Shown: in pieces, positions 2,898 to 20,149 of the stretch
Layout of the letters: every line of letters starts with the position of its first letter
Position numbering within the stretch: position 1 is the first letter of the stretch
Origin: Octopus bimaculoides
Lineage: Eukaryota
Assembly (NCBI RefSeq): GCF_001194135.2
Contig: NC_069009.1
Location: forward strand, 650,661 to 683,457
Length of the DNA: 32,797 nt
Direction of reading: 5' to 3'
The notes under the pieces: generated by a model
What the model saw: only the letters and a program-made list of their open reading frames with translations
What the model was told of the DNA's origin: nothing
Databases searched by the model: none
Program-made: the position numbers and the translations under genes

Positions 2898-4554
2898 TTA
2901 CACCTGTGTATGAATATTCAGATGTTTACTTAAGTGGCCTTTTGCATGGAATGATTTACCACAGATATTACAAGGATATGGCTTCTCTCCTGTATGAATA
3001 AATTTGTGGTTTGTCAAGACATAATTTCTAGAGAAAGATTTACCACAGATATTACAATGAAATGGCTTCTCTCCTGTATGAATACGCTTGTGTTTTGTCA
3101 AGACACCATTTGTAGAGAAAGATTTACCACAGATATCACACTGATATGGTTTTTCTCCTGTATGAACACGGTTGTGTATAGTTAAAGCGCGATTTTCGGA
3201 AAATGATTCACCACAGATATCACATTGATATGGTTTTTCTCCAGTATGAATACGTTTGTGTGTAGTCAAGGAATTATTTGAAGACAATAATTTACCACAG
3301 ATATCGCATTCATATGGCTTCTCACCTGTATGTGTACGTTTGTGTTTAGCCAAGTCACCACTTCGAGAGAATGATTTACCACAGATATCACACTGATATG
3401 GTTTTTCCCCAGTATGGATACGTTTATGACTAGTTACACTGCTATTTTCAGAAAATGATTTACCACAGATATTACAATGATATGGCTTCTCTCCTGTATG
3501 AATACGCTTGTGGTTTGTCAAGACATCATTGCTAGAGAAAGATGTACCACAGATATTACAATGATATGGCTTCTCTCCTGTATGAATACGCTTGTGTTTT
3601 GTCAAGACACCATTTGTAGAGAAAGATTTACCACAGATATCACACTGATATGGTTTTTCTCCTGTATGAACACGGTTGTGTATAGTTAAAGCGCAATTTC
3701 CGGAAAATGATTTACCACAGGTATCACACTGATATGGTTTTTCTCCTGTATGAACACGGTTGTGTATAGTTAAAGCGCAATTTCCGGAAAATGATTTACC
3801 ACAGGTATNNNNNNNNNNNNNNNNNNNNNNNNNNNNNNNNNNNNNNNNNNNNNNNNNNNNNNNNNNNNNNNNNNNNNNNNNNNNNNNNNNNNNNNNNNNN
3901 NNNNNNNNNNNNNNNNNNNNNNNNNNNNNNNNNNNNNNNNNNNNNNNNNNNNNNNNNNNATTTACCACAGATATTACACTGATATGGTTTTTCCCCAGTA
4001 TGAGTACGTTTGTGCCTGATCAAGTGACTATTAGAAGACAATGATTTACCACATATATTGCATTCATATGGTTTTTCCCCAGTATGAATACGGTGATGAC
4101 TAGTCAAGTGACTACTACGGGAGAATGATTTGCCACAGGTATTGCAATGATATGGCTTCTCTCCTGTATGTGTACGTTTGTGTCTAGTCAAGTCACCACT
4201 TTCAGAGAATGATTTACCACAGATATCGCAATGATATGGCTTCTCTCCTATATGTGTAAGCTTGTGTCTAGTCAAGTGACCAATCTGAGAGAATGATTTA
4301 CCACAGATATCACAGTGATATGGTTTTTCACCAGTATGAATACGCTTGTGACAAGCCAAGTGACTACTACAAATGAATGATTTACCACAGGTATCACAAT
4401 GATATGCTTTCTCTCCTGTATGAATACGTTTGTGTACTGATAACTCACTGCTTTGACAAAATGATTTACCAGAGATATCAAAGTAATATGGCTTCTCTCC
4501 TGTATCAGGGATTTTTGGTTTAGTTATATTCATTCTAAGAGAATAATTTGTCAT
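2898..4554 (-). CDS. Tandem C2H2 zinc-finger protein (ZNF-A), about 18 fingers, no KRAB/SCAN/BTB; interrupted by assembly gap 3809-3959
   Basis: Repeating CxxC-x12-Hx3H with TGEKPY linkers at an 84-bp period. Five complete fingers plus one partial before the gap, 11 (first partial) after it, stop at 2898. CGK-to-CGK spacing across the gap is 166 nt versus 168 for two fingers, so the frame offset fits gap mis-sizing. First in-frame ATG is at 4554 (MTNYS...); the track's 4677 start is TTG. Confidence 0.9.
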
Positions 4555-4922
4555 ACATGTCACAATGATAATGTTTCTGTCATTCCTATGAATATGTTTG
4601 TGATTGGTTGTGTCACTATTCCCAGAAAATAATTTAATCTTATGTTTCTTTCGTCTGTGATCTTGCGTAATATCCAAAACAGATGTAAAACTGTCAAGTC
4701 CTTTGTAAAGTTAACCAAGTTTAATTAACCTGTAAAGCAATCACCTCCTCTACATTCCAGACAGCGAAGACAAGAAAATGTTGCTGTTAATACCATCGTC
4801 CAGAAGAAATATTTTCCAATTGTTCATCATAGATTTTACTTATATAAAGTAGTTGATTTATTGATGAATGTGCTTTGTAGATGCCTCGTCTTCCTTGGAA
4901 TAAAAGTCTCAGATGTGATATT

Positions 4923-4936: not shown

Positions 4937-5114
4937 GAATGTAGTAAGAAACAGAGGATAGATGGTGAATTGACAGATTAATTCAACATTGCAAATATTA
5001 CAACATTAAGTGTCACCCATTTAATATGTATGTTTACATGGGTAAGAATGGCACATTGGGTATCCACAATGCATCCCCTCCCCGTTTCCGGGTAATATTG
5101 TAAAACCGACTTAC

Positions 5115-5143
5115 GCCCTCCTACCAATGTTCAGACCTTGTGC
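5115..5143 (-). other. Candidate 29-nt 5'UTR micro-exon of ZNF-A
   Basis: Minus strand TCCTTTGTACTTTAG|GCACAAGG...GGAGGGC|GTAAGT, with good acceptor and donor consensus on both sides. No transcript evidence. Confidence 0.35.
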
Positions 5144-5188
5144 CTAAAGTACAAAGGATTATCATTATTATTATTGCATTAAATAATA

Positions 5189-5784
5189 CAATAATAATAA
5201 TGTCTTGCAAACAACTCGCACATGCTACCAGTCGAGAACTCCCCTTACCGGAAGCTAGCAAGTGTATGGGGTCATCAGGAGAAAATGCGCGCCGTTTCGG
5301 GCCTTTTTCACGACGGCATAAATGCGCACAGACCCCCCCCCCTCACTAATATGAAGCCCCGCTTGCTAGATCAACTGGTTATTAAAAACAAAGCTCAATA
5401 TTTCTCTAGCCATCGCCTCTTTTTAACCAAATCCAGTGGTTAGCCTTCTCCACTGTATTTGAGATATCGGTCAAGGCGGTATTTACCTTACAGTGAGTTA
5501 GGCCTAACAAGAACAACAGTCGTTTCACACTGTGTCCTACAAACCCTCTACATCCAACTTCGATTGGAAAATGCTCCGCTTTCCCGCCTGCGTCTTCATA
5601 TTTCTCGAGGAGGTTTACATAACGGTCAATCTTTCGAGCCCGCGCGCCGTCCACATTATCTTCATGAGGAACCGTTAACTCGACTAGATTTACAACTTTC
5701 CTTCTTTCACACCACATTAAAATGTCCGGTTTTTCCGTAACTGGGGTGGGGAAAGAATGCTTGGCACACAGGTAGATCTGCAGT
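5189..5784 (-). mobile_element. 5'-truncated non-LTR retrotransposon with restriction-like endonuclease (Hero-like clade), C-terminal fragment plus 3'UTR
   Basis: Minus translation TADLPVCQAFFPHP, a frameshift, then VTEKPDILMWCERRKVVNLVELTVPHEDN...RKIDRY...IEVGCRGFVG...VEKANHWIWLKR (stop at 5406). The PD..ELTVP..VEVGCRGF..WLWLKR pattern matches Hero-type RLE domains. The 3'UTR ends in ATTATTATTATT at ~5189-5201. Degraded sequence may extend to ~5945. Confidence 0.8.
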
Positions 5785-6730
5785 TAAAAGGGATTAAAGG
5801 CAAAATTGACCGCGGTGCTAAGTCCTGACTTCAAATACGGTCTAGGTCGTGTTTCATCCCTTTCCGGAAATACTGGGTTCCATGTATTCGACTTCCCCCT
5901 CACATCAAAGATTTCTGGCCCTGGGCCAGAACTTGAAACCATCATCTCCCTTACTATTATTAATATAACCTTAAAGCAAATCTTTGTCAACTTCATGTTT
6001 TATCAATGCTTCATAAAGATCAGGACAACATTAATTAATGTGGCATTCTTCAATCGATTTCTTCTCATTTTACTAATTAATTACGACCATTTAATTTCTT
6101 TTATATCCCATGAAACAATCGATCGTAGGTCTTCATAAAGAACAGATCAACATTTCAGTTTACAAGCTATTATTTAAGACGAGCAAATATATTTTCCTAA
6201 TGTGGTTTTCGCTTCAAAAAGTAATTAATTTACGATCGAAAGGTTCACATAATTCTATTATTTACATTATTATTATTAATAGTATTATCATCATCATTAC
6301 AGCCTTAAAATAAATCTTTGTCAGCTTACCGTATTCAGATATAAACGAGCCAGTGATCGTTAATTAAGCACCTTAATTAAGAATCGAATTAGACCACGAT
6401 GGAAGTGGTGTATAAGTTATTTCCCTTGTTATGTTTATATTCAATTTTCCAGTAGATGGCTCTCCTGACTGGTCGGTTTCGTTCCAGTGGTTTTTTTCTT
6501 TGTCCCATTCTGTCAACAACTTCATCTTCAAGTTTTCACCAGATTATTGATATATAGGGTGATTATTTGAATTAATAGATATATATAAAAGTTTTTTTAT
6601 TATAAAGTAGTGGGTATAGAAATATTTTTGTTTGTTGTACTGAAGAGGAGAAATTGTTTGGTTTAGTTTTAAGTATAGTAAAATTTAAATTTTGTACCTT
6701 TTGCATAAGGGTTTAATAATATTATTAGGT

Positions 6731-7145
6731 GGTAATCTTCCAGTTTCGAGAGGTTAAAAAAATAAATAAAATACAAGGGAAATAACAACGTTTTACCAGT
6801 ATTATCCGTACTACTTTGTTTATGAATAAATCACGTGATTTGATTGACGTTAACTGTTTATAATATAAATCACACACGTGATTGAATATCATAGTTTCTT
6901 ATGAGAAATCAAAAAATGCCTCGTAGAAGACCGGCTGCACAACATCTTATTGTTGCTGAAAACGAAATCCTGACTCCTGAATTAATATTAGAGGAAAAAT
7001 GGATAATGCTGTTTTAGATTCTTTTCTGCCTGTTAAAATTCCGTCGCATGCTGTTTTAGAGAAAAAGTAGTACGGATAATACTGGTAAGTCGTTCAGTTA
7101 TTTCCCTTGAATATTTCTTTTACCCCTCGAAACTGGAAGATTACC
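6731..7145. mobile_element. 415-bp non-autonomous TIR element (MITE-like) flanked by a 15-bp direct repeat
   Basis: Imperfect TIRs at 6731-6817 and 7064-7145 (GGTAATCTTCCAGTTTCGAG... / ...CTCGAAACTGGAAGATTACC; inner block TTACCAGTATTATCCGTACTACTTT). The identical 15-mer ATAATATTATTAGGT lies at 6716-6730 and 7146-7160. Confidence 0.88.
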
Positions 7146-7180
7146 ATAATATTATTAGGTATATATTGTTTTCTCGAAAT

Positions 7181-7948
7181 ATAAAGCTTGGACCCTTATG
7201 ATTTGACGGGCAACATTTTTTTTATGTAGTGTTTTTGGTACCGAAACACTTTCAAACTTCGTATACTTGTATATTTTGTGGTATAGAACAGATAAAAAAT
7301 TTTGTATTCGAAGTTATTTCACGTTAAAAATTGTCTTATTTCGATAATTTCAACTAATCATTGACGTCTATTCAGTTGAATACAGTTACTGCTGTGACGG
7401 TGTATATGGTATTAATCCCCGTTAGTTCTGACATTTCCGATTAACTAGACTGTTCGTAAACAAAGGGGGAAAAGCCATCAAAATACTTGAATATTGCCTG
7501 CACTTGTTATTGGAGCTGCTACAATTATTAATGGACCTCCACCAAGTGCTTCATTTCCTAGAAATAGCAGCCAAATCTTCTTCAAATCAAACTCTAGTTT
7601 GGGGTTAGGGTTAGGGTTAATTTATTATATAAACAATATATGCGTATAAATTACGATTAAACCGGATGAAATATGTCACAGGGAATAACATTTTTATGAC
7701 CGGCCAAAAATGATTGTTTACGAAAGAGCGCTGACTGTATTCAGCTGAATAGACGTCAGTGATTGGTTGAAATTACAGAAATACGACAACTTTAACATGA
7801 AATAACTTGCGATGTACAACTTTTTGTTAAGAAGGCTAAGAGAAAAAGTTGTTTTGTATGACGCATTCTACCAGTGTCCCAAGTTTGAAAGTGTTTCGTT
7901 AAGAAAACAAGTGTTGCCCGTCAAATCACAAAGATCCTAAAGCTTTAT
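7181..7948. mobile_element. ~770-bp non-autonomous element with ~210-bp imperfect TIRs (MITE-like)
   Basis: Arms 7181-7386 and 7734-7948 share inverted blocks: ATAAAGCTT/AAGCTTTAT, TGATTTGACGGGCAACA/TGTTGCCCGTCAAATCA, CGAAACACTTTCAAACTT/AAGTTTGAAAGTGTTTCG, and TGACGTCTATTCAG.TGAATACAGT. No clear TSD. Confidence 0.8.
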
Positions 7949-8003
7949 TTGCTTTATTATATTCAAGAAGAGTGGGTGCACTCGCGCATCCGCGGTAGCG
8001 AGT

Positions 8004-8188
8004 CGTGACTAGTCGATCCTACGACTACCTAGTGTGAGTGCGCATCATGTGCAGAAATAGATCTGACACCAAAATACACCCTGGAAGGACGTAAAACAAC
8101 ATTTTAAGAGTAAGATGGGGGAAGATTCAACGAAAAGAAAATTATTTACTTTGTGTTTATTTACTTTGTTTGGGATCGACTAGTCACG
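8004..8188. repeat. Perfect 16-bp inverted repeat (153-nt spacer) abutting the start of the CpG array
   Basis: CGTGACTAGTCGATCC at 8004-8019 is the exact reverse complement of GGATCGACTAGTCACG at 8173-8188. Confidence 0.9.
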
Positions 8189-11100
8189 TTCGTTCGTTCG
8201 TACGTACGTTCTTTCGTTATTTCCATCCTACGTACGTACGTTCGTTTGTTCGTTCGTTCCTACGGATGTTCGATCGTTCGTTTGTTTGTACTTATGCACG
8301 TTTGTTCGTTCATACGTACGTTCGTTCGTTATTTTCTGCCTACGTACGTTTGTTCGTACGTACGCATTTTTGTTCGTTCAATTGTTCATACATACGTACG
8401 TATATATGTACGTTCGTTCGTTATTTCCTGCCTACGTACGTTTGTTCGTACGTACGCATTTTTGTTCGTTCAATTGTTCGTACATACGTACGTATATATG
8501 TACGTTCGTTCGTATTTACGTACGTACGTTCGTTCTTTTATTCGTTCGTACGTACGTTCGTTCTTTTATTCGTTCATACGTACGTACGTAAGTTCGTTCG
8601 TACGTTCGTTCGTTTGTTCGTACTTATGCACGTTTGTTCGTTCATACGTACGTTCGTTCGTACGTACGTTCGTTCGTTCGTACGTTCCTTCGTACGTATG
8701 TTCCTTCGATCGTTCGTTCGTTCCTTCATTCGTACGTTCGTTCGTTTGGTCGTTCCTCCGTACATATGTACGTTCGTTCGTACGAACGGAACTACGTTCG
8801 TTCTTTCGTTCACTCGTACGTACGTGCGTTCGATCGTTCGTTCCTTTGTAAGTACGTTCGTTCTTTCGTTTGTTCGTACTTACGCACGTTTGTTCGTTCA
8901 TACGTATATTCGTTCGTACGTTCAGTCGTTCGTACGTACGGACGTTCTTTCGCTATTTCCTGCCTACGTACGTACGTTCATTCGTTAGTTCGTTCCTTCG
9001 TACGTACGTGCGTACGATCTTTCGTTCTTACCTAAGTTCGTTCGTTCGTACGTTTGTTTGTACGTACGTACGTCCTTTCGTTATTTCCTGCCTACGTGCG
9101 TACGTTCGTTTGTTCCTTCCTTCGTTCGTACGTACGTTCGTTTGTTCGTATGTACGATCGTTTGTTCGTACGTACGTATGGACGTACTTACGTTCGTTAG
9201 TACGTTCGATCGTTCGTTCCTTCGTAAGTATGTTCGTTCTTTCGTTTGTTCGTACTTACGCACATTTGTTCGTTCATACGTATGTTCGTTCGTTCGTACG
9301 TTCATTCGTTCGTACGTACGTTCTTTCGTTATTTCCTGCCTACATACGTACGTCCGTTCATTCGTTAGCTCGTTCGTTCCTTCCTACGCACATTCGTACG
9401 TACGTTCGTTCGTAAGTACGCTCGTTTGTACGTATGTTCGTTCGATCGTTCGTTCTTTCGTTCGTTCATTCGCACGGTCGTTCCTATGTACGTACGAACG
9501 GAACTCTGTACGTACGTACGTTCGTTCATTCGTTCGTTCTTACTTACGTAACTGCGTTCGTTCTTTAATTTGTTGGATTGTCCCTTCGTACGTACGTACG
9601 TTCTTTCGTTATTTCCTGCCTACCGACGTACGTACGTTCGTTTGTTCGTACGTACGTATGGACTTACGTTCGTTCGTTCGTACTTACGTTCGTTCGATCG
9701 TTCGTACGTTCTTTCGTCATTTCCTGCGTACGTAATACGTACGTACGTTCGTTCGTACGTAGTTCATTCGTTCAATCGTTCGTACGTACGTACGTATATA
9801 TGTACGTTCGTTCGTACTTACGTACGTACGTTCGTTCATTTGTTCGTTCTTACGTCCGTACATTCGTTCCATCGTTCTTGTTCGTTCTTTCGTTCGTACG
9901 TACGTTCGCACGTTTGTTCGATCATACGTACGTACGTTATTTCGTTATTACCTGCCTACGTAATACGTACGTTCGTACGTACTTTCATTCGTACGTACGT
10001 ACTTACGTTCTTTCCTGCCTGCGTACGTATGTACGTTCATTCCTTCCTTCGTTCGTACGTACGTTCTTTCGTCATTTCCTGCCGACGTAATACGTACGTA
10101 CCTTCTTTCGTTATTTCCTGTCTACGTACGTACGTACCTTCTTTCGTTATTTCCTGTCTACGTACGTACGTACGTTCGTTCGTACGTACGTACGTACGTT
10201 CGTTCGTACGTTCGTACGTACGTACTTTATTTCTTGCCTGCGTACGTACGTACACTCATTCGTTAGTTCCTTCGTATGTACGTTCGTTCGGACGTATGTT
10301 CGTTCGATCGTTCGTTCTTTCGTTCGTTCGTTCGTTCGTTTGGTCGTTCCTACGTGCGTGCGTTCGATCGTTCGTTAATTCGTTCGTCCTTACTTACGTA
10401 AGTGCGTTCGTTCTTTAATTCGTTCGATTGTTCCTTCGTACGTGCGTACGTTCGTTCTTACGTACGTTCTATCTTTATTTCCTGCCTACCTACGTACGTT
10501 CGTTCGTTCCTTCCTTCGTACGTTCGTTCGTTCCTTCCTTCGTACGTACGTTCGTTTGTTCGTTCGTACGTACGTATGCACGTAATTACGTTCGTTCGTT
10601 CGTATATACGTTCGGTCGTATATACGTTCGTTCGTTCCTTCGTACGTACGTTCGTTCGTACGTAAGTTCTTTCGTGCGTACGTACTTCTTTTGTCATTTC
10701 CTGCCTACGTAATACGTACGTACGTTCTTTCGTTATTATCTGCCTATATACGTACGTTCGCTCTTACGTACGTTTGTTCGTTCGTATGTTGGTACGTACG
10801 TACTTTCTTTCGTTATTTCTTGCCTACGTACGTACGTTCGTTAGTTCGTTCGTTTGTTCGTACGTACGCACGTTTGTTCGTTCTTATGTACGTTCGTACG
10901 TAAGTTCGTTCGTTCAATCGTTCGTACGTACGTACGTACGTATATATGTACGTTCGTTCATTCGTACGTACGTGCGTTTGTATATACGTGCGTTCGTATA
11001 TACGTGCGTTCGTTCGTTCGTTCGTTCGTACGAATGGAACTACGTACGTGATTACGTAACGAAGAAACGAACATACTTACGTACGTTCGTTCGTACCAAC

Positions 11101-14042
11101 GTACGTAAGTATGTTCGTTTCTTCGTTCGTACGTACGTACGTTCTTTTGTTCGTTGGTTCCTTCGTACGTAGTTCGTTCGATCGTTCGTTTGTTCGTACG
11201 TACGCACGTTTGTTAGTTCATACGTACGTTCGTTCGTCATTTCCTGCCTACGTACGTACGTACTTTCGTTCGTTATTTCGTTCGTTCCTTCGTACGTACA
11301 TTCGTTCGTACGTATGTTCATACGATCGTTCGTTCGTTCATTCGTAAGTACGTACGTTAGTTCGTTCGGTTGTTCCTACATACGTATATATGTACGTTCG
11401 TTTGTTCATACGAACGGAACTACGTACGTACGTAATTACGTACGTTCGTTCGTTAATTCGTAGGTACGTGCGTACGATCGTTCGTTAATTCGTTCGTTCT
11501 TTAACTCGTTCGATTGTTCGTTCGAACGTACGTACGATATTTCGTTATATCTTGACTGCGTACGTACGTTCGTTCATACGTACGTTGGTTCGGTCGTACG
11601 TACGTAAGTTATTTCCTTATTTCTTGCCTGCTTATGTACGTTCGTTCGTACGTAGGCTCGTTCGTACGTACGTATATATGTACGTTCGTTCGTACTTACG
11701 TACGTACGTACTTTCGTTGGTACCTACGTTCGTTCTTTCATTCGTTCGTACATACGTTCGTACGTTCGTTCTAACGTACGTACGTAAGTTCGTTCGTACG
11801 TACGTTCGTTTGTTCGTTCGTTCCTTCGTACGTACGTTCGTTCGCTCCTTTGTTCATACGTACGCACGTGTGTTCGTTCGTACGTACGTTCTTTCGTTAT
11901 TTCCTGCCAACGTACGTACGTAAGTTCATTCGTTAGTTCGTTCGTTCCTTCGTACGTACGTTCGTTCGTACTTACATTCGTTCGTACGTATGTTCGATAG
12001 TTCTTTCGTTCGTTCATTCGTACGTTCGTTCGTTTGGTCGTTCCTACGTACGTATGTACTACGTTCGTTCGTACGAACGGAACTACGTAGTACGTACGTT
12101 CTTTCTTTCGTTCATTCGTACGTACGTGCGTATGATCGTTCGTTAATTCGTTCGTTCTTACTTATGTAAGTGCGTTCGTTCTTTAATTCGTTCGATTGTT
12201 CCTGCCTACGTACGTACGTTCTTTCGTTATTTCCTGCCTATGTACGTACGTACGTTTCTTCCGTCCTTCGTAGTACGTTTGTTTGTTTCTTCGTTCGATC
12301 GTACATACTTACGTTCGTTCGCACGTACTTTCGTTCGTTCGTACGTACGTACGTATATATGTACGTTCGTTCGTACTTACGTACGTACGTTCGTTCTTTT
12401 ATTCGTTCGTACTTACGTACGTACGTTCGTTCTTTTATTCGTTCGTACGTACGTATGTTCGTTCGATCGTTCATACGTACGTACGTACGTAAGTTCGTTC
12501 TTTTGTCCGTCCGTACGTAAGTACGTTCGTTTTTTCGTTCGTACGTACGTACGTTCGTTTGTTCGTTCGTTTCTTCGTACGTACGTTCGTTCGTTTGTTC
12601 GTACGTACGCATGTTTGTTCGTTCATACGTACGTTCGTTCGTACGTACGTACTTTTTTTCGTCATTTCCTGCCTACGTACGTACGTTCGTTCGTATTTCC
12701 GTACGTACGTTCGTTCGTATTTCCGTACGTACGTACATTCGTTTGTACTTCCGTACGTTCGTTCGTTCGTTCGTTCATACGTAAGTACGTTCATACGTAC
12801 GCACGTACGTAAGTTCGTTCGTTTTATCGTTCATACGTACGTACGTTCGTTTGTTCGTTCGTTCCTTCATAAGTACGTACGTTCGTTTGTTCGTTCGTTC
12901 CTTTGTAAGTACGTTCGTTCTTTCGTTTGTTCGTACGTACGTTCGTTCGTTTGGTCGTTCCTACGTACGTATGTACGTACGTTCGTTCGTTCGTTCATAC
13001 GAATGGAACTACGTACGTACGTTCGTTCTTTCGTTATTTACTGCCTACCGACGTACGTTCGTTCCTTCCTTCGTTCGTATGTACGTTCGTTCGTTCGTTC
13101 GTTTATTCGTTCGTACGTACGTATGCACGTACTTACGTTCCTTCGATCGTTCGTTCGTACGTACGTTCTTTCGTACGTACGTTCTTTCGTACGTACGTTC
13201 GTTCGTACGTACGTTCTTTCGTACGTACGTTCGTTCGTACGTACGTACGTTCTTTCGTCATTTCTTGCCTACGTAACACGTAATTACGTCCGTTCGTACG
13301 TACGTTCTATCGTTATTATCTGCCTACGTAGTACGTACGTTCGTCCGTACGTACGTAAGTACGTTCGTTCTTACGTACTTTCGTTCGTTCGTTCGTACGT
13401 ACGTTCTTTCGTTATCTCCTGCCTACGTACGTACGTTCGTTCATTCGTTGGTTCGTTCCTTCGTACGTTCGTTCGTTTGTTCGTACGTACGCACGTTTGT
13501 TCGTTCTTACATACGTTCGTTCGTTTGTACGTATGTTCTTTTGTTATTTACTGTCTACGTACGTACGTTCGTTCGTACGTAATTTCGTTCGTTCAATCGT
13601 TCGTACGTACGTACGTATATATGTACGTTCGTTCGTACTTACGTACGTACGTTCGTTAGTACTTACGTACGTACGTTCGTTCGTACTTACGTACGTACGT
13701 TCGTTCTTTTATTCGTCCGTACATAGGTACGTACGTTCTTTTGATCGTTCATACGTACGTACTATCTTTATTTCTTGCCTGCGTACGTACGTTCGTTCGT
13801 ACGTAACTTTGTTCGTTCAATCATTCGTTCTTTCGTACGTACGTTCGTTCGATCGTTCGTTTGTTCATACGTACGCAGGTGTGTTTGTTCATACGTACGT
13901 TCGTACGTTCGTTTGTACGTTCGTTCGTACGTACGTGCGTTCTTTCGTCATTTCCTGCCTACGTACGTACGTAAGTTCGTTCGTTATTTCGTTCGTTCCT
14001 TTGTACGTACGTTGGTTTGTTCGATCGTTCATTCTTTCGTAC
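8186..14042 (+). repeat. Complex CpG-rich tetranucleotide array (TACG/TTCG), T-rich orientation
   Basis: ~5.9 kb of mixed TACG and TTCG units with a recurring longer motif TTCTTTCGTTATTTCCTGCCTACGT (ATTTCCTG at 8423, 8955, 9083, 9331, 9611 and elsewhere). Confidence 0.97.
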
Positions 14043-15733
14043 CTACGAACAAAAGAAAGAACGTACGTACGAACGAACGTACGTACGTACGTAGGCAAAT
14101 AATAACGAAAGAACGAACGTACGTACGTATTACGTAGGCAGGAAATGACGAAAGAACTTACGTACGCACGAACTAAGTTACGTACAAACGAACGAAAGAA
14201 CGTACGTACGAACGAACGTACATACGTAGGTAAGAAATAACGACACAACGTAAGTACGAACGAACGTACGTACATATTTCGTAGGCAGGATTAAACGAAA
14301 GATCTACGTACGTACGAACGAAGAAACGACCGAACGCACGTACGTACGAAGGAACGTACGTACGTAAGAACGAACGTTCGTACGTAAGAACGAACGTACG
14401 TAAAAACGAACGTACGAACAAAAGAATGATTGAACGAACAAACGTACATACGTAGATAAGAAATAACGACAGAACGTAAGTACGAACGAACGTACGTACG
14501 TATTTCGTAGGCAGGAATTAACGAAAGATCGTACGTACGTACGAACGAAGAAACGAACGTACGTACGTATTACATAGGCAGGAAATAACGTACGTGGACA
14601 GGAAATAACGAAAGAACGTACTTACGTACGAAGGAACGAACGAACGTACATATTACGTAGGCAGGAATTAACGAAAGAACATACGTTCGTAGGTAAGAAC
14701 GATCGGACGTACGTAACAATGAACGTACGTTCGTAAGAACGAAAGTATGTACGTAAAAACGTACGAACGAAAGAACGATTGAACGAACGAACGTACATAC
14801 GTAGGTAAGAAATAACGACAGAACGTAAGTACGAACGAACGTACGTATTTCATAGGCAGGAATTAACGAAATATCGTACGTACGTACGAAAGAAGGAATA
14901 AACGAACGTACGTAAGTACGAACGAACGTACGTACGTACGTATTACATAGGCAGGAAATAACGAAAGAACGTACGTACGAACGAACGTACGTACGTAGAC
15001 AGGAAATAATGAATGAACGTACTTACGTACAAAGGAAAGTACGTACGAAGGAACGAACGTACATATTACGTAGGTAGGAAATAACGAAAGAGCATACGTA
15101 CGTACGTAAGAACGAACGTACATACGTAGGTAAGAAATAACGACAGAACGTAAGTTCGAACGTACGTACGTATTTCGTAGGCAGGAATTAACGAAAGATC
15201 GTACGTTCGTACGAAAGAAAAAATAAACGAACGTACGTACGTATTACATAGCCAGGAAATAACGAAAGAACGTACGAACGAACGTACGTATGAACGAACG
15301 TATGTACGTACGTGGACAGGAAATAACGAAAGAACGTACTTACGTACGAAGGAACGAACGAACGAATGTACATATTACGTAGGCAAGAAATAACGAAAGA
15401 ACGTACGTACATAAGAACGAACGTATGTAAGAACGAACGTACGTACGTACGTACGTAAAAACGTACGAACGAACGAAAGTACGAACAAAAGAACGATTTA
15501 ACGAACGAACGTACGTAAGCAGGTAAGAAATAACGACACAACGTAAGTACGAACGAACATACGTACGTATTTCGTAGGCAGGAATTAACGAAAGACCGTA
15601 CGAACGAAGAAATGAACGAACGTACGTACGTATTACGTAGGCCTAAATTAACGAAAGATCGTACGTACGGAGAAAAGAACGAACGTACATATGAACGAAC
15701 AAACGAACGTACCTACGTACGAACGTACGTACG

Positions 15734-15735
<2 letters not shown>
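14043..15735 (-). repeat. Same CpG-rich array in inverted (A-rich, CGAA/CGTA) orientation, with higher-order repeat
   Basis: Reverse-complement units including ACGTAGGCAGGAAATAACGAAAGAA. The marker TAAGAAATAACGACA recurs at 14231, 14457, 14806, 15131 and 15524. Confidence 0.97.

Positions 15736-15736
<1 letters not shown>

Positions 15737-15767
<31 letters not shown>
15737..15767. repeat. (AT)n microsatellite adjoining gap 15768-16035
   Basis: Pure AT run followed by Ns. Confidence 0.95.
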
Positions 15768-16185
15768 NNNNNNNNNNNNNNNNNNNNNNNNNNNNNNNNN
15801 NNNNNNNNNNNNNNNNNNNNNNNNNNNNNNNNNNNNNNNNNNNNNNNNNNNNNNNNNNNNNNNNNNNNNNNNNNNNNNNNNNNNNNNNNNNNNNNNNNNN
15901 NNNNNNNNNNNNNNNNNNNNNNNNNNNNNNNNNNNNNNNNNNNNNNNNNNNNNNNNNNNNNNNNNNNNNNNNNNNNNNNNNNNNNNNNNNNNNNNNNNNN
16001 NNNNNNNNNNNNNNNNNNNNNNNNNNNNNNNNNNNCGTATATATGTATACATAATGATATATACATATTTTCATTTATATATATACACATATACATACAT
16101 ACATATATTTAAATACATAAATATGGATATGTCCCCCTTTATCTTAAAACTTAGGTGTATATTTTTACGTATCTATCTATCTAGA

Positions 16186-16904
16186 GGGGTAAAGAGAGAT
16201 ACGTAGTAGTAAACAGAGGAAGAACGAGAGGGGGGAAAATTGAAGAGAAAGAGAAGGAGTAGCGTCGGAAAATATAAAGTTGCGAAAACTACTTACAGAT
16301 TGGTGACGCTGCGTTCGGTCATACGTACAGGCATGTGCATACCGACATCCACCTGTATGTATAGGTGCATATCTGGGTACAGGACATTGCAAACAAAACG
16401 TAGACGAGAAAACACACAAGCCACATAGAGAACATTCTTCTTCATCAGCTACCCCCGTTTTAACACCGNNNNNNNNNNCGGCTCTTCCCATGGAGGAATG
16501 TAGTGGCGGACAAAAAACAAGACAGGAAAACAAACAGAAAAGGCTATACGGCCAGACGGGAAAAATTATGTGTATGAACGCTGTGAGGCACGAACTTGAA
16601 AGTGGGGACGAAGTAAGTTCGCGTGTTTGCTCGGCGATAGCCAAGGAAGAAAAGGATTATTGACTGGAAGCATGTGACCATGCCGGTGTAAGGGGAAGAG
16701 AGAGAGAGTGGTAGAGGGAGAAACAAAGGGAGGAAATAGAAGAATAGGTGAGCAACGAGAGGAAGAGAGGAGGTAAGAGGGGGCAAAAGGAGATACGTAG
16801 TAGTAACAGAGGAAGAACGAGAGGGGTAAAGAGAGATACGTAGTAGTAAAGTGGAAGAACGAGAGGGGGGGAAATGATAGAGGAAGAGAAAGAGATAGAG
16901 TAGC
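16186..16904. repeat. ~640-bp tandemly repeated unit (second copy cut by a gap), containing a dispersed repeat
   Basis: GGGGTAAAGAGAGATACGTAGTAGTAAA...GAGTAGC at 16186-16263 recurs at 16823-16904. Segment 16321-16405 recurs inverted at 24263-24347. Confidence 0.65.
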
Positions 16905-17004
16905 NNNNNNNNNNNNNNNNNNNNNNNNNNNNNNNNNNNNNNNNNNNNNNNNNNNNNNNNNNNNNNNNNNNNNNNNNNNNNNNNNNNNNNNNNNNNNNNN
17001 NNNN

Positions 17005-17280
17005 TCTGCGTGTGCGTGTGTGCTTAATCTAGCCTCCGCGTCCGTGCTGCTTTTTGTCTCTGTGTCTGTGTGTCCGTACCGCTGTTTGCCTCTGTGTCAG
17101 TGTGCGTGCTTGTTCTTGCCTCTGTCTGCGTGTGCGTGTGTGCTTGTTCTTGTCTCTGTGTTTGTGTGTCCGTGCCTGTTCTTGTTCTTGCCTCTGTGTC
17201 TGTGTGCGCGTGCGTGCGTGCGTGCTTGTTCTTGCCTCTGTATCTGTGTGCGTGCGCGCGCGCTTGTTCTTGCCTCTGAT
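17005..17280. repeat. GT-rich complex micro/minisatellite (TGTG/GCGT with a CTTGTTCTTGCCTCTG module)
   Basis: Repeated CTTGTTCTTG(C/T)CTCTG modules embedded in TG/CG dinucleotide runs. Confidence 0.85.
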
Positions 17281-17322
17281 TCTAACAATTTTTAAATCAA
17301 TAAACACGCGTAACCATATATG

Positions 17323-17632
17323 TGTTGGCAGTCAGTCGCTTACGACGTCGAGGGTTCCAGTTGATCAGATAAACGGAACAGCCTGCTCGTGAAATGAACG
17401 AGCACTCCACAAACACGTGTACCCTTAATGTAGTTCTCGGGGATATTCAGCGTGACACGAAGTGTGACAAGGCTGAACCTTTGAATTACAGGTACAACAG
17501 AAACAGGAAGTAAGAGTGAGAGAGAAAGTTGTGGTGGAAGAGTACAGCAGGGTTCGCCACCATCCCCTGCCGGAGCCTCGTGGAGCTTTAGGTGTTTTCG
17601 CTGCCTTAACCACTGGGCCATTGCGCCTCCAC
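17323..17632 (-). mobile_element. tRNA-derived SINE, family A, internally deleted (B-box lost)
   Basis: Reverse complement of family A. The head GGAGGCGCAATGGCCCAGTGGTTAAGGCAGCG is joined directly to AAAACACCTAAAG via AGCG microhomology. Tail ...GCCAACA. Confidence 0.9.
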
Positions 17633-17639
17633 ACCATGT

Positions 17640-17884
17640 CATTCATACACATCCAACAAAGCATGCTTGCTTCACATCTTTCCAGTCTTCACAAATCCTC
17701 TGCATTTTAAGGCTCATGTTTTACTACTATGCATTATTGCAATCTGCTCTTCTGTCTAAGAAAAGATCGTTTCCAGCAACAGTAGTGTCTCCTTGAACTC
17801 TCTCCAAACTACCCCTCTTGCTAATTGAATCTAGGTAACAAAACTATCAATTGCTTCTAGTGAACCATCCAGGCATTTAAAACC
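17640..17884 (-). mobile_element. Degraded RTE-like LINE fragment (region C-terminal to the RT core)
   Basis: Frameshifted minus translation GFKCLDGSLEAIDSF..WREFKETLLLL..AIMHSSKT*A(fs)LNAEDL*RLERCEASMLCWMC resembles the RTE pattern LEVVDSFCYLG..GWKKFRELLPLL..MLHGSETWAL..RLERNEASMLRWMC. Multiple stops. Confidence 0.65.
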
Positions 17885-18541
17885 ACCTGCTTCTGGCGTG
17901 CTCATTGTATGTATAGCTCTACTTTTTACATATTTTTTATATCTTACAATTTTCTTTCTCAATTATTTCAGAATGCCAGAAACAGCAAAGAACTGTTTTC
18001 TCATACACCATCAATATCGATCATCTTTTCAAAACTAAAGGAAAATGTTCCACAAAATGGATATACACCCTGTTATATAAATCTATGTTAGAATTTCTGC
18101 TAAATATTTCTTCAGAACGAAGATGAATATCATTGTTTGTCTTGTTGAATTCCTGAAAACTTTACAAGATCACTTTGCATTTTAATAAAAATTTGGATTG
18201 CAAAGGAGTTTGCAGCAACTTGAGATAATCAGCAAAGATCTCTGTTGACGGAAATATAACGATTGTGATATTTGTTGAGAATATGATACAAACACAAAGA
18301 GAAGCAAACTTGTGTATAAATTCAAATTACGACAAACATAAATAAACAAACGAAGTTTGCTTTTAGAAGCGTTGAGATGTCTTAGAAAGTTAAAGAAGTG
18401 ATTTTAAATTCTCAAACGCAGAATAATGCTAATAATATAGCCTGAACAGGATAAACTACCCCTATTTTGCAGAGAAAAGTGTAGGTGGCTAGCTGTTGAG
18501 AATTTAAACTTGTGTATATTTGTGGTAAGAAAAGGAAAATT

Positions 18542-20149
18542 ATGGAAAATGATTTAAGTGACAATGAAACACAGACTGAAAAGATTGACTTTCCTGATGA
18601 TGTGAAGATTGAGAAAGGTAAAAAATCATACCATTGTGATATCTGTGGCAAACCATTCTCTCACAGTAGCAACTTAACTAAGCATAAATCTGTTCATACA
18701 GGAGAGAAACCATATCGCTGTAACATCTGTGGTAAATCATTCTCCCGGAAGGATAACTTGATTACTCACCAGCGTATTCATACAGGAGTGAAACCATATC
18801 ACTGCGACACCTGTGGAAAAGCCTTCTCTCAAAAGGACAACTTGATTACTCACCAACGTATTCATACAGGAGAAAAACCGTATCACTGTGATATCTGTGG
18901 TGAATCGTTTTCTCAAAGTGTTCATTTGAATAAACACAAACGCATTCATACAGGAGAGAAACCATATTGCTGTGATGTCTGTGGTAAATCATTCTCCGCA
19001 AACGGTACCTTAACTAGACATAAACGTATCCATACAGGAGAAAAACCTTATCACTGTGATGTCTGTGGTAAATCATTCTCCGATGGAAGTCGTTTACATA
19101 AACACAAACACATTCACACAGGAGTAAAACCATATCATTGTGATATCTGTGGTAAGTCATTCTCTAGTACATATGCCCTTTCTAGTCACAAACATATTCA
19201 TACAGGAGAGAAACCATATCACTGTGACATCTGTGGTAAATCATTTTCTCATGGTCATACTTTAACTATTCACCGACACATTCATACTGGAGAGAAACCA
19301 TATCACTGTGAGATCTGTGGTAAATCCTTCACTGAAACCAGTCACTTAACTAAGCACAAGCGCATTCATACAGGAGAGAAACCATATCACTGTGATATCT
19401 GTGGCAAATCATTCTCTCAGAAAGATAACCTAATTCCTCACCAACGTATTCATACAGGAGAAAAACCATATCACTGTGATATCTGTGGGGAAACATTCTC
19501 TCAAAATGGTAATTTAACTAAACACAAATGCATTCATACAGGAAGCCAACTATATTTCTGCAATATCTGTGGTAAATCATTCTCTCAAAAGAGCTCCTTG
19601 AAAAGACATATTCGCATTCATACTGGGGAGAAACCATATCACTGTGATATCTGTGGTAAATTATTTTCTGAGAATGGGACTTTAACAATCCACAAACGCA
19701 GTCATACAGGAGAGAAACCGTATCATTGTGACATCTGTGGTAAATCATTCTCCGACACTGGTCATTTATCTCGGCATGTACGTATTCATACGGGAGACAA
19801 ACCACATCACTGCGATATCTGTGGAAAGTCCTTCTCTGAAAATGGAGATTTAACAAGACATATCCGCATTCATACAGGAGAGAAGCCATATCAGTGTGAC
19901 ATTTGTAGTAAATCATTCTCTCATGGACATGCCTTAACTGCTCACAAACGCACTCATACAGGTGAGAAACCATATCACTGTGATATCTGTGGAAAATCTT
20001 TCTCCGAGACTGGCCACTTAACTAAACACAAGCACATTCATACAGGACTGAAGCTACATCACTGTGATATCTGTGGCAAATCATTCTCTCATGGACATGT
20101 TTTAACTAGACACAAACGCATTCATACAGGAGAGAAACCATATCACTAA
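18542..20149 (+). CDS. Tandem C2H2 zinc-finger protein (ZNF-B), 535 aa, 18 fingers, short acidic leader, no KRAB/SCAN/BTB
   Basis: Uninterrupted ORF from ATG 18542 ([21 protein letters not shown]...) with 18 CxxC-x12-HxxxH units and TGEKP linkers. Preceded by the acceptor-like CCCCTATTTTGCAG at 18459-18472. Confidence 0.95.

What the first reader, a model, noticed from the sequence alone, without database searches (positions are those of the whole stretch)
8186..15735. 7.5-kb ultra-CpG-dense TACG/TTCG array between two divergent ZNF genes
Seen: roughly one CpG per 4-5 nt over 7.5 kb in otherwise AT-rich DNA, built from self-complementary TACG runs mixed with strand-asymmetric TTCG. CpGs appear largely retained rather than decayed to TpG/CpA, although some CATA/TATG variants occur. 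Inference: the array is young, homogenised or unmethylated. Possible roles include an artificial CpG island or methylation sink, a massive ACGT-core (bZIP/bHLH) binding platform, a cruciform/hairpin-prone fragile element, or a satellite recognised by the neighbouring ZNFs.
Basis: partly seen in the sequence, partly recalled or inferred. Interest (0 to 1): 0.72.

Follow-up and report, generated by a model that had tools for sequence, protein, structure and literature searches.

The report
Degenerate CpG-rich tetranucleotide satellite in octopus
The 7.5-kb CpG-dense stretch is a real but old and degenerate non-coding repeat built on a 4-base T-(A/T)-C-G lattice in the Octopus bimaculoides genome, and its CpGs most likely survive because octopus intergenic DNA is largely unmethylated, not because the array is young or has a shown function.

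Summary
The window is Octopus bimaculoides chromosome CM046629.1, about 0.65 Mb from one end, in a short-read assembly later scaffolded with Hi-C.

**What is there**
- The array sits exactly at 8186-15735.
- It holds 1168 CpGs where base composition predicts 349 (o/e 3.35; flanks 0.76-0.79). That is one CpG per 6.5 nt, not per 4-5.
- It is a 4-nt lattice T-[A/T]-C-G. In the left arm, 97.6% of CpG-to-CpG distances are multiples of 4.
- TTCG and TACG are finely intermixed, with pure runs of at most 5 units.
- A 26-nt core block, TTCTTTCGTYATTTCCTGCCTACGTA, occurs 40 times and only inside the array.

- There are two inverted arms, 8186-14047 and 14048-15735, that switch strand within a TACG tract.
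- Copies are only about 70-73% alike, and no exact repeat reaches 71 nt.

So the array is old and degenerate, not young or homogenised.

**CpG retention.** Only 42% of lost CpGs became TG or CA. The published methylome reports under 10% of CpGs methylated, mostly in gene bodies. Both fit an unmethylated array.

**Function.** Nothing supports one. The neighbouring zinc-finger genes' crude predicted binding sites do not resemble the lattice.

**Still open.** Genome-wide copy number, conservation in other octopuses, and long-read confirmation could not be tested.

The parts
8186..14047 (+). Left arm: 5.9 kb of T-rich T-[A/T]-C-G tetramer lattice (TTCG/TACG mosaic). 932 CpGs, one per 6.3 nt.
   Evidence: TRF period 4 with 1460 copies, and weak 32/36-nt periods. 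909 of 931 CpG-CpG distances are multiples of 4. Of 1415 tokens, 411 are TTCG and 403 TACG, with only 22 phase shifts. Identity is 0.52 at lags that are multiples of 4 and 0.21 at other lags.
14040..14053 (.). Strand-switch junction TTCGTAC|CTACGAA, inside a self-complementary TACG tract and within a gap-free contig.
   Evidence: Sequence read directly. The AT-skew sign flips here. No N run is nearby. Arm complementarity next to the centre is 75-79%, no higher than the array-wide background.
14048..15735 (-). Right arm: 1.7 kb of the same lattice on the minus strand. 236 CpGs, more frequent phase shifts, 63-71-nt sub-units and a higher-order period of about 345 nt. It carries arm-specific core variants.
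   Evidence: TRF rows 14045-15237 (period 345) and 15157-15557 (period 71). Token analysis. Core-context listing shows recurring AATTCC...AAATACG and ATTTCTTACC variants. It is 72-78% complementary to left-arm segments.
8209..15596 (.). 40 dispersed copies of a 26-nt core block, TTCTTTCGTYATTTCCTGCCTACGTA (25 on +, all in the left arm; 15 on -, all in the right arm). The block stays in the 4-nt register, as TTAT-TTCC-TGCC-TACG. The spacing of its 14-nt sub-motif is 32-660 nt in the left arm and about 20-281 nt in the right arm.
   Evidence: Pattern search with up to 3 mismatches: 40 matches, all inside the array, 0 expected from shuffles. The 14-nt sub-motif has 46 copies, again only in the array.
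15737..16035 (.). (AT)15 followed by a 268-N assembly gap. The right boundary of the array is unresolved.
8004..8188 (.). 185-bp segment bounded by a perfect 16-nt inverted repeat (CGTGACTAGTCGATCC), directly abutting the left end of the array. Possibly a small inverted-repeat element. Its relation to the array is unknown.
   Evidence: 2 matches against 0.01 expected. No copy in the other octopus loci sampled.
2898..4677 (-). Context: left flanking C2H2 zinc-finger ORFs, split by a 151-N gap, transcribed away from the array.
   Evidence: ORFs. Pfam zf-H2C2_2 at 3.3e-94 and 1.6e-49.
18512..20149 (+). Context: right flanking 18-finger C2H2 zinc-finger gene, transcribed away from the array. A called gene of 535 aa.
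   Evidence: The O. vulgaris orthologue is 93.7% identical at the DNA level.

Best explanation
This is a real, non-coding, old and degenerate satellite-like array in an intergenic region of the Octopus bimaculoides genome. It was built on a tetranucleotide lattice T-[A/T]-C-G.

Inferred origin. Replication slippage and unequal exchange in steps of 4 nt expanded TTCG/TACG-type units. Point mutations then accumulated to about 30% divergence. A mutated in-register block, the 26-nt core, was spread through the array by further duplication. An inversion or inverted duplication, with its breakpoint in a self-complementary TACG tract, produced the two opposed arms. The right arm later underwent some local homogenisation, giving the ~345-nt higher-order period and the arm-specific core variants.

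CpG density. The extreme density is a direct consequence of the repeat unit. It has persisted because this DNA is probably not methylated in the germ line, so CpG is not hypermutable. This step is inferred from the mutation spectrum and the published methylome.

Function. No sequence-specific function is indicated. The long ORFs across the array exist only because the lattice lacks stop codons.
For: Shown:
- Identity and placement. The window is O. bimaculoides CM046629.1. The array is contiguous with a ZNF exon in one gap-free contig.
- Lattice. 97.6% of CpG spacings are multiples of 4. The per-position consensus is T 93%, A/T 95%, C 82%, G 75%. There is a strong 4-nt autocorrelation.
- Age. 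Self-identity is 70-73% at all offsets. No exact repeat reaches 71 nt. Pure runs are at most 5 units.
- Core block. 40 copies, only in the array, in register.
- Inverted arms, with no excess identity near the centre.
- CpG-loss spectrum. TG 50, CT 48, CA 35, AG 18, CC 17 of 202.
- Coding and RNA. No Pfam domain in the longest array ORF, no Rfam family, and no gene called across the array in the public annotation.

From the literature: the octopus methylome has under 10% of CpGs methylated, concentrated in gene bodies, with intergenic DNA and repeats largely unmethylated (PMC9476566).

Context: kilobase-scale tetranucleotide arrays occur elsewhere in octopus genomes. An example is (TGGA)~660 in the long-read O. 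sinensis assembly.
Against: - The sequence comes from a short-read shotgun assembly (PMC9068888). The right end is a gap, and neither the length nor the inversion has been checked with long reads.
- The same methylome paper notes relatively higher methylation on satellites. The array has no CCGG site, so RRBS is blind to it.
- CpG positions have diverged 2.4-3.4 times more than the lattice T position. Some CpG-specific decay has therefore occurred.
- Variant counts are not independent events, because variants are copied along the array.
- Absence of function cannot be shown from sequence.
- Genome-wide copy number and conservation are unknown.
Confidence: 0.7

Rival explanations
1. Functional DNA element. 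The array would act as a binding platform (for neighbouring or other C2H2 ZNFs, or for ACGT-core bZIP/bHLH factors). Alternatively it would act as a non-B-DNA (Z-DNA or fold-back) or boundary element between the two divergently transcribed ZNF genes.
For: - It lies between divergent ZNF ORFs.
- Each arm presents the same A-rich (CGAA/CGTA) strand as the sense strand of its adjacent gene.
- There are 533 ACGT cores.
- 116 alternating pyrimidine-purine tracts of at least 12 nt, all containing CpG, cover 23.5% of the array. The 25 kb of flanks hold 7.
- The single strand across the junction is predicted to fold strongly (z = -12.9).
- A 2025 paper states that the repeat targets of cephalopod C2H2 genes are an open question (PMC12513265).
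Against: - Crude recognition-code sites for the three flanking ZNF ORFs show no TWCG periodicity and only 1-3 CpGs.
- The array is degenerate, with no more-conserved sub-region apart from the core block.
- Perfect palindromes are at most 20 nt.
- No array was seen in the 2.2 kb upstream of the orthologous O. vulgaris ZNF.
- No occupancy, expression or conservation data are available.
Confidence: 0.08
2. Assembly artefact or chimera. Part of the length, the internal inversion, or the placement next to the right-hand ZNF would result from mis-assembly of low-complexity short reads.
For: - The assembly is the 2015 short-read shotgun assembly re-scaffolded with Hi-C.
- The window has nine N gaps totalling 2691 N, and one of them directly abuts the array.
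- No independent assembly of this locus could be retrieved.
Against: - The array lies in one gap-free 11.8-kb contig together with ZNF coding sequence.
- 99% of 51-mers and all 71-mers are unique within it, so a de Bruijn path is well defined.
- The junction is not a near-perfect palindrome of the kind made by chimeric reads, being 75-79% complementary.
- Mis-assembly normally collapses repeats rather than creating 7.5 kb of unique degenerate sequence.
Confidence: 0.1
3. Array carried by or derived from a transposable element. The lattice with its core block would be the internal or tail tandem repeat of a mobile element, dispersed at many loci.
For: - A perfect 16-nt inverted-repeat pair bounds a 185-bp segment exactly at the array's left edge.
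- A conserved 26-40-nt core block recurs 40 times.
- The octopus genome is rich in interspersed repeats. SINE-like copies are present in the window.
Against: - The inverted repeat flanks the 185-bp segment, not the array.
- No target-site duplication was seen.
- The right end is lost in a gap.
- Neither the border segment nor the array occurs in 136 kb of other octopus loci.
- No transposase or reverse-transcriptase ORF adjoins the array.
Confidence: 0.12

Closest known systems
Compound or imperfect microsatellites and 'cryptically simple' DNA produced by slippage (general knowledge, not tested against a database)
   Same: A 4-nt unit iterated in a constant register. Indels are almost always multiples of the unit. 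Two related motifs, TTCG and TACG, differ by one base. The sequence is non-coding.
   Different: It is 7.5 kb long, with no pure tract longer than 5 units. It also has a recurring 26-nt core block and a higher-order period, features of satellites rather than microsatellites.
Satellite or minisatellite DNA with higher-order repeats
   Same: A kilobase-scale tandem, non-coding array. There is a recurring core, a ~345-nt higher-order period in the right arm, and arm-specific variants that suggest local homogenisation.
   Different: The monomer length is irregular: the spacing of the core's 14-nt sub-motif is 32-660 nt in the left arm. Copies are only about 70% alike. Multi-locus abundance is unknown.
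Crustacean (hermit crab, Pagurus) tetranucleotide satellites interrupted by a longer 'punctuation' sequence (recalled from memory, a lead only)
   Same: A simple tetranucleotide repeat interspersed with a longer conserved block.
   Different: Different motif and taxon. Those satellites make up a large genome fraction, and abundance here is unknown. The comparison was not tested.
The (TGGA)~660 array of 2.6 kb downstream of the chondroitin-synthase homologue in O. sinensis (L002:28789-31411)
   Same: A kilobase-scale tetranucleotide array in an octopus intergenic region, here in a long-read assembly.
   Different: The motif has no CpG, the array is much purer (79% matches at period 4), and there are no inverted arms.
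Vertebrate CpG islands
   Same: CpG o/e is far above the genome background, and the array lies between two divergently oriented genes.
   Different: G+C is 43%. It is a simple-repeat lattice rather than complex promoter sequence. The host genome has mosaic gene-body methylation, so CpG islands in the vertebrate sense are not expected.

Membership tests
Microsatellite (simple sequence repeat) | Head-to-tail iteration of a 1-6-nt unit in a constant register | tested here: met
   909 of 931 CpG-CpG distances in the left arm are multiples of 4. Autocorrelation is 0.52 at multiples of 4 and 0.21 elsewhere.
Microsatellite (simple sequence repeat) | Long uninterrupted tracts of one motif; total length tens to hundreds of bp | tested here: not met
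   The longest pure run is 5 units for either TTCG or TACG. The array is 7550 nt.
Satellite / minisatellite DNA | Kilobase-scale tandem non-coding array | tested here: met
   TRF. No Pfam domain, Rfam family or called gene.
Satellite / minisatellite DNA | Definable monomer repeated at a regular period | tested here: inconclusive
   The 26-nt core has 40 copies. The spacing of its 14-nt sub-motif is 32-660 nt in the left arm. The right arm shows 63-71-nt units and a ~345-nt period at only 70-88% matches.
Satellite / minisatellite DNA | Homogeneity among copies (concerted evolution) | tested here: not met
   Self-identity is 70-73% at all offsets. Only arm-specific core variants hint at local homogenisation.
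Satellite / minisatellite DNA | Presence at many loci or high genomic abundance | not testable with these tools
   No searchable octopus genome was available. None was seen in 25 kb of window flanks plus 136 kb of O. sinensis and O. vulgaris loci. Metagenome hits were short microsatellites only.
CpG island (Gardiner-Garden and Frommer type) | Length over 200 nt and CpG o/e over 0.6 | tested here: met
   o/e 3.35 over 7550 nt.
CpG island (Gardiner-Garden and Frommer type) | G+C above 50% | tested here: not met
   G+C is 43.0%.
CpG island (Gardiner-Garden and Frommer type) | Unmethylated in the germ line; promoter-associated | not testable with these tools
   No methylation or transcript data were available. 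There are 0 CCGG sites, so published RRBS cannot cover the array.
Long inverted repeat / palindrome (cruciform or fold-back element) | Two adjacent arms in inverted orientation without a spacer | tested here: met
   Strand switch at about 14047. 1350 inverted pairs.
Long inverted repeat / palindrome (cruciform or fold-back element) | Near-perfect arm-to-arm complementarity | tested here: not met
   72-78% complementary and 75-79% next to the centre. Perfect palindromes are at most 20 nt.
Transposable-element-borne tandem array | Terminal repeats and target-site duplication bounding the array; copies elsewhere | tested here: inconclusive
   The 16-nt inverted repeat bounds a 185-bp border segment, not the array. 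The right end is in a gap. No copies in the sampled loci.
Satellite targeted by the adjacent C2H2 ZNFs | Predicted ZNF binding sites match the repeat | tested here: not met
   Crude recognition-code prediction gave 3, 1 and 1 CpG in 54, 30 and 15 nt, with no 4- or 12-nt periodicity. The method is weak, so this counts only as lack of support.

The most novel reading that the evidence does not exclude
The array could be one member of an octopus-specific family of CpG-dense TWCG satellites with a chromatin or topological role. It might be a landing pad for expanded C2H2 zinc-finger proteins or for the methylation machinery. It might instead be a Z-DNA or fold-back 'supercoil sink' or boundary between divergently transcribed ZNF genes, with the 26-nt core block as the recognised unit.
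Probability: 0.05. Interest if true: 0.6.

Novelty: new member of a known kind. Interest (0 to 1): 0.25.

Why it matters
**If it is just a degenerate satellite,** its value is practical.
- It is a natural gauge of CpG mutability in unmethylated invertebrate DNA: about 1800 lattice slots with a known ancestral CpG state.
- It is a region that RRBS cannot see, because it has no CCGG site.
- It is a place where the short-read O. bimaculoides assembly needs long-read validation.

**If instead** such arrays prove to be a family enriched in the cephalopod C2H2 clusters, they would give a concrete candidate. The question of which repeats the expanded cephalopod zinc-finger genes bind is still open (PMC12513265).

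Tried and rejected
1. **Translating an array ORF and searching the protein collection** for other arrays. Only generic (TTCG/TTCA)n-type low-complexity ORFs from unrelated eukaryotes came back. The best TACG/TTCG-like hit (P0048, L012) is a ~330-bp (TACGTTCG)n tract in a GC-rich protist-like contig. This gave no information on octopus copy number.
2. **Searching with the right-hand ZNF** to collect octopus ZNF loci. The output was swamped by vertebrate ZNFs and no octopus hit was listed, so the plan to sample ZNF clusters failed.
3. **Orthologous locus.**
   - O. vulgaris L009 is syntenic (CHSY exon 90%, ZNF 93.7%), but it ends about 2.2 kb beyond the ZNF's 5' end. That is just short of where the array would lie.
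   - O. sinensis L002 has no ZNF downstream and may not be collinear.
4. **Metagenome and viral scans** with a 22-nt lattice word gave six short microsatellites and no viral hits.
5. **Perfect-palindrome or chimeric-read artefact at the junction:** rejected, because complementarity near the centre equals the background.
6. **Recent segmental duplications or a higher-order repeat in the left arm:** none found.
7. **Inverted duplication including the flanks:** no similarity between 5000-8190 and 16036-18500.
8. **Rfam** over the whole window and **Pfam** on the array ORF gave nothing.
9. **Literature searches** for octopus or cephalopod satellites or tetranucleotide arrays found no description of this repeat.
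Full report
**Origin of the window**

A chondroitin-synthase-like exon at 22103-23502 (-) matches a protein from assembly GCA_001194135.2 at 100%. It matches Octopus sinensis, O. bimaculoides and O. vulgaris paralogues or orthologues at 81-87%. Look-ups place the window on O. bimaculoides chromosome record CM046629.1 (11.99 Mb), at about 650,661-683,457.

That assembly is the earlier short-read shotgun assembly re-scaffolded with Hi-C (PMC9068888). This explains the nine N runs, 2691 N in total.

**Checking the observation**

- Region 8186-15735 (7550 nt, 43.0% G+C) holds 1168 CpGs against 348.8 expected from composition. That is o/e 3.35, one CpG per 6.46 nt.
- The flanks have o/e 0.76 and 0.79.
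- TpG (194) and CpA (148) are rare inside the array.
- TRF finds a period-4 array at 8187-14040 and a complementary one at 14038-15739.

The dense CpG array is therefore real and at the stated coordinates.

The flanking ORFs at 2898-4677 (-) and 18512-20149 (+) are C2H2 zinc-finger arrays, with Pfam E-values from 1e-49 to 1e-147. They point away from the array. The array shares a gap-free contig (3960-15767) with part of the left ZNF ORF. On the right it ends in (AT)15 and a 268-N gap.

**Anatomy: a 4-nt lattice**

In the left arm, 909 of 931 distances between successive CpGs (97.6%) are multiples of 4. Read in that register, the 1415 tetramers have this consensus:

| Lattice position | Consensus |
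|---|---|
| 1 | T, 93% |
| 2 | A 41% / T 54% |
| 3 | C, 82.5% |
| 4 | G, 75% |

- TTCG (411) and TACG (403) dominate.
- The next most common tetramers are single-base variants: TTCT 63, TTTG 62, TTCC 55, TTCA 46, TATG 37.
- The two main units are finely interleaved, and no pure run exceeds 5 units.

**Anatomy: two inverted arms**

AT skew flips from about -0.5 to +0.4 near 14,045. The sequence reads ...TTCGTAC|CTACGAA... at the switch, inside a self-complementary TACG tract and with no gap nearby. The right arm (14048-15735) is the same lattice on the other strand.

**Anatomy: a punctuating core block**

The core TTCTTTCGTYATTTCCTGCCTACGTA occurs 40 times with up to 3 mismatches. Twenty-five copies are on + in the left arm and 15 on - in the right arm. 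None lies elsewhere in the window, and shuffles predict 0 (14-nt version).

The block stays in the 4-nt register, as TTAT-TTCC-TGCC-TACG. It therefore looks like a mutated stretch of lattice that was later copied along the array (inference).

- In the left arm, the spacing of its 14-nt sub-motif is irregular, at 32-660 nt.
- In the right arm there are 63-71-nt sub-units, a ~345-nt higher-order period, and arm-specific core variants: AATTCC...AAATACG, ATTTCTTACC and ...TAATACG.

**Age and homogeneity**

- Self-comparison gives a flat 70-73% identity at every offset, with no younger duplicated segments.
- 99% of 51-mers are unique within the array, and no exact repeat reaches 71 nt.

The array is therefore old and degenerate. 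This contradicts the 'young' and 'homogenised' options. It also makes a de Bruijn-graph assembly of it plausible.

The junction is not a near-perfect palindrome. Complementarity in the first 200 nt either side of the centre is 75-79%, no better than the array-wide 70-76%. A chimeric-read palindrome artefact is therefore unlikely.

**CpG retention**

Where a single CpG has been lost between two in-register CpGs (n = 202, left arm), the replacements are as follows:

| Replacement | Count |
|---|---|
| TG | 50 |
| CT | 48 |
| CA | 35 |
| AG | 18 |
| CC | 17 |
| others | 34 |

Deamination-type products (TG + CA) are only 42% of losses. If the CpGs were methylated, such products would be expected to dominate (own knowledge).

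CpG positions have diverged more (17.5% and 24.7%) than the lattice T (7.2%), so some extra CpG decay exists. Variants are copied within the array, so these counts are not independent events.

The published O. bimaculoides methylome reports the following (PMC9476566):
- Under 10% of CpGs are methylated, clustered in gene bodies.
- Over 85% of CpGs are intergenic and depleted of methylation.
- Repeats are largely unmethylated, although satellites are somewhat higher.

In such a genome, an intergenic CpG-rich repeat needs no special mechanism to keep its CpGs. The array contains no CCGG site, so MspI-based RRBS data cannot address it.

**Structural potential**

- (TACG)n is both self-complementary and strictly alternating pyrimidine-purine.
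- The array holds 116 alternating tracts of at least 12 nt (longest 31), all with at least 2 CpGs. They cover 23.5% of its length, against 7 such CpG-containing tracts in 25 kb of flanks.
- Perfect palindromes are short, at most 20 nt.
- Because the arms are inverted, a single strand across the junction is predicted to fold strongly: -109.6 kcal/mol for 301 nt, against a shuffle mean of -58.2, z = -12.9.

These are potentials only. Nothing shows that they are used.

**Tests of function and of relatives**

- The longest array ORF (366 aa) has no Pfam domain. The ORFs exist because the lattice lacks stop codons.
- No Rfam family is present in the window.
- No gene is called across the array in the public annotation.
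- A crude C2H2 recognition-code reading of the 18, 10 and 5 fingers of the flanking ORFs gives sites with 3, 1 and 1 CpG and no 4- or 12-nt periodicity. This is weak evidence, but it does not support recognition by the neighbours.
- The syntenic O. vulgaris locus (L009) keeps the CHSY-ZNF arrangement, with 90.3% and 93.7% DNA identity. It ends about 2.2 kb beyond the ZNF's 5' end with no array seen, just short of the expected position.
- About 136 kb of O. sinensis and O. vulgaris loci contain no TWCG array.
- One of those loci carries a 2.6-kb (TGGA)n array, so kilobase tetranucleotide arrays as a class are not rare in octopus.
- A metagenome scan with a 22-nt lattice word found only short microsatellites, and the viral scan found nothing.
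- Literature searches found no description of this repeat.

**Conclusion**

The best-supported reading (confidence about 0.7) is a neutral, slippage-derived tetranucleotide-lattice satellite that has aged to about 70% self-identity. It acquired and spread a 26-nt core variant and suffered an inversion within a TACG tract. It keeps its CpGs because the DNA is probably unmethylated.

The rivals are a functional element (about 0.08), an assembly artefact (about 0.1) and a TE-borne array (about 0.12, not exclusive of the main reading).

It is a new member of a known kind, satellite or cryptically simple DNA. Interest is modest unless a genome-wide scan shows a family tied to ZNF clusters.

Noticed in passing
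window 8186-14047 vs 14048-15735, with ZNF ORFs at 2898-4677 (-) and 18512-20149 (+): Mirror symmetry. Each arm presents the A-rich (CGAA/CGTA) strand as the sense strand of the ZNF gene next to it, as if a [ZNF + upstream array] unit had been duplicated in inverted orientation. No similarity was found between the unique flanks, so this may be coincidence.
   Followed up: partly
window 8004-8188: A 185-bp segment bounded by a perfect 16-nt inverted repeat (CGTGACTAGTCGATCC; 0.01 expected by chance) ends exactly where the array starts. Possibly a miniature inverted-repeat element. No copies in the other sampled loci.
   Followed up: partly
L002:28789-31411 (O. sinensis CM016885.1): A 2.6-kb (TGGA)n array of about 660 copies at 79% matches lies 4.7 kb downstream of the chondroitin-synthase homologue in a long-read assembly. 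Kilobase-scale tetranucleotide arrays of other motifs therefore exist in octopus genomes.
   Followed up: no
window 17319-17500, 1918-2112, 20794-20982, 29615-29806, 29354-29455; also 21531-21971, 27768-28087, 31897-32281: Two families of short interspersed (SINE-like) repeats, 80-93% alike, with many further copies in the O. vulgaris and O. sinensis loci.
   Followed up: partly
window 17040-17278: A GT-rich minisatellite with 32-50-nt units (GTGCGTGC... / CTCTGTGTC...) containing CpGs, between the array and the right-hand ZNF. It adjoins a 100-N scaffold gap at 16905-17004.
   Followed up: no
window 16183-16263 and 16780-16904: A purine-rich ~42-nt repeat (AAAGAGAGATACGTAGTAGTAAA...GAAGAACGAGAGGGG), duplicated about 600 nt apart just right of the gap. 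It contains ACGTAG and GAACGA words reminiscent of the right arm but has no significant alignment to it.
   Followed up: partly
window 24378-24568 and 24854-25186: (ATAG)48 is followed by a CAC/ACC-rich tract that would encode a His/Thr/Pro-rich low-complexity peptide. Both lie inside the chondroitin-synthase-like gene region. The O. vulgaris locus aligns across the tract (L009:22106-22951, 85%).
   Followed up: no
L009:34328-34839 (O. vulgaris OX597842.1): A partial extra copy of the 5' part of the ZNF (91.8% to window 18506-18996) lies between the chondroitin-synthase gene and the full ZNF orthologue in O. vulgaris. There is no counterpart in the window.
   Followed up: no
window 2949-3808, 3960-4603, 18623-20176: The ZNF ORFs show the expected 84-nt finger period. 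The left gene also shows 252-nt (three-finger) higher-order duplication, and a 151-N gap (3809-3959) splits that gene.
   Followed up: no
L012:1170-1500 (ENA metagenome contig k119_158210): A ~330-bp (TACGTTCG)n-type tract in a GC-rich eukaryotic contig that ends in CCCTAA-like telomeric repeats. This shows that short TACG/TTCG compound microsatellites occur in unrelated taxa.
   Followed up: no
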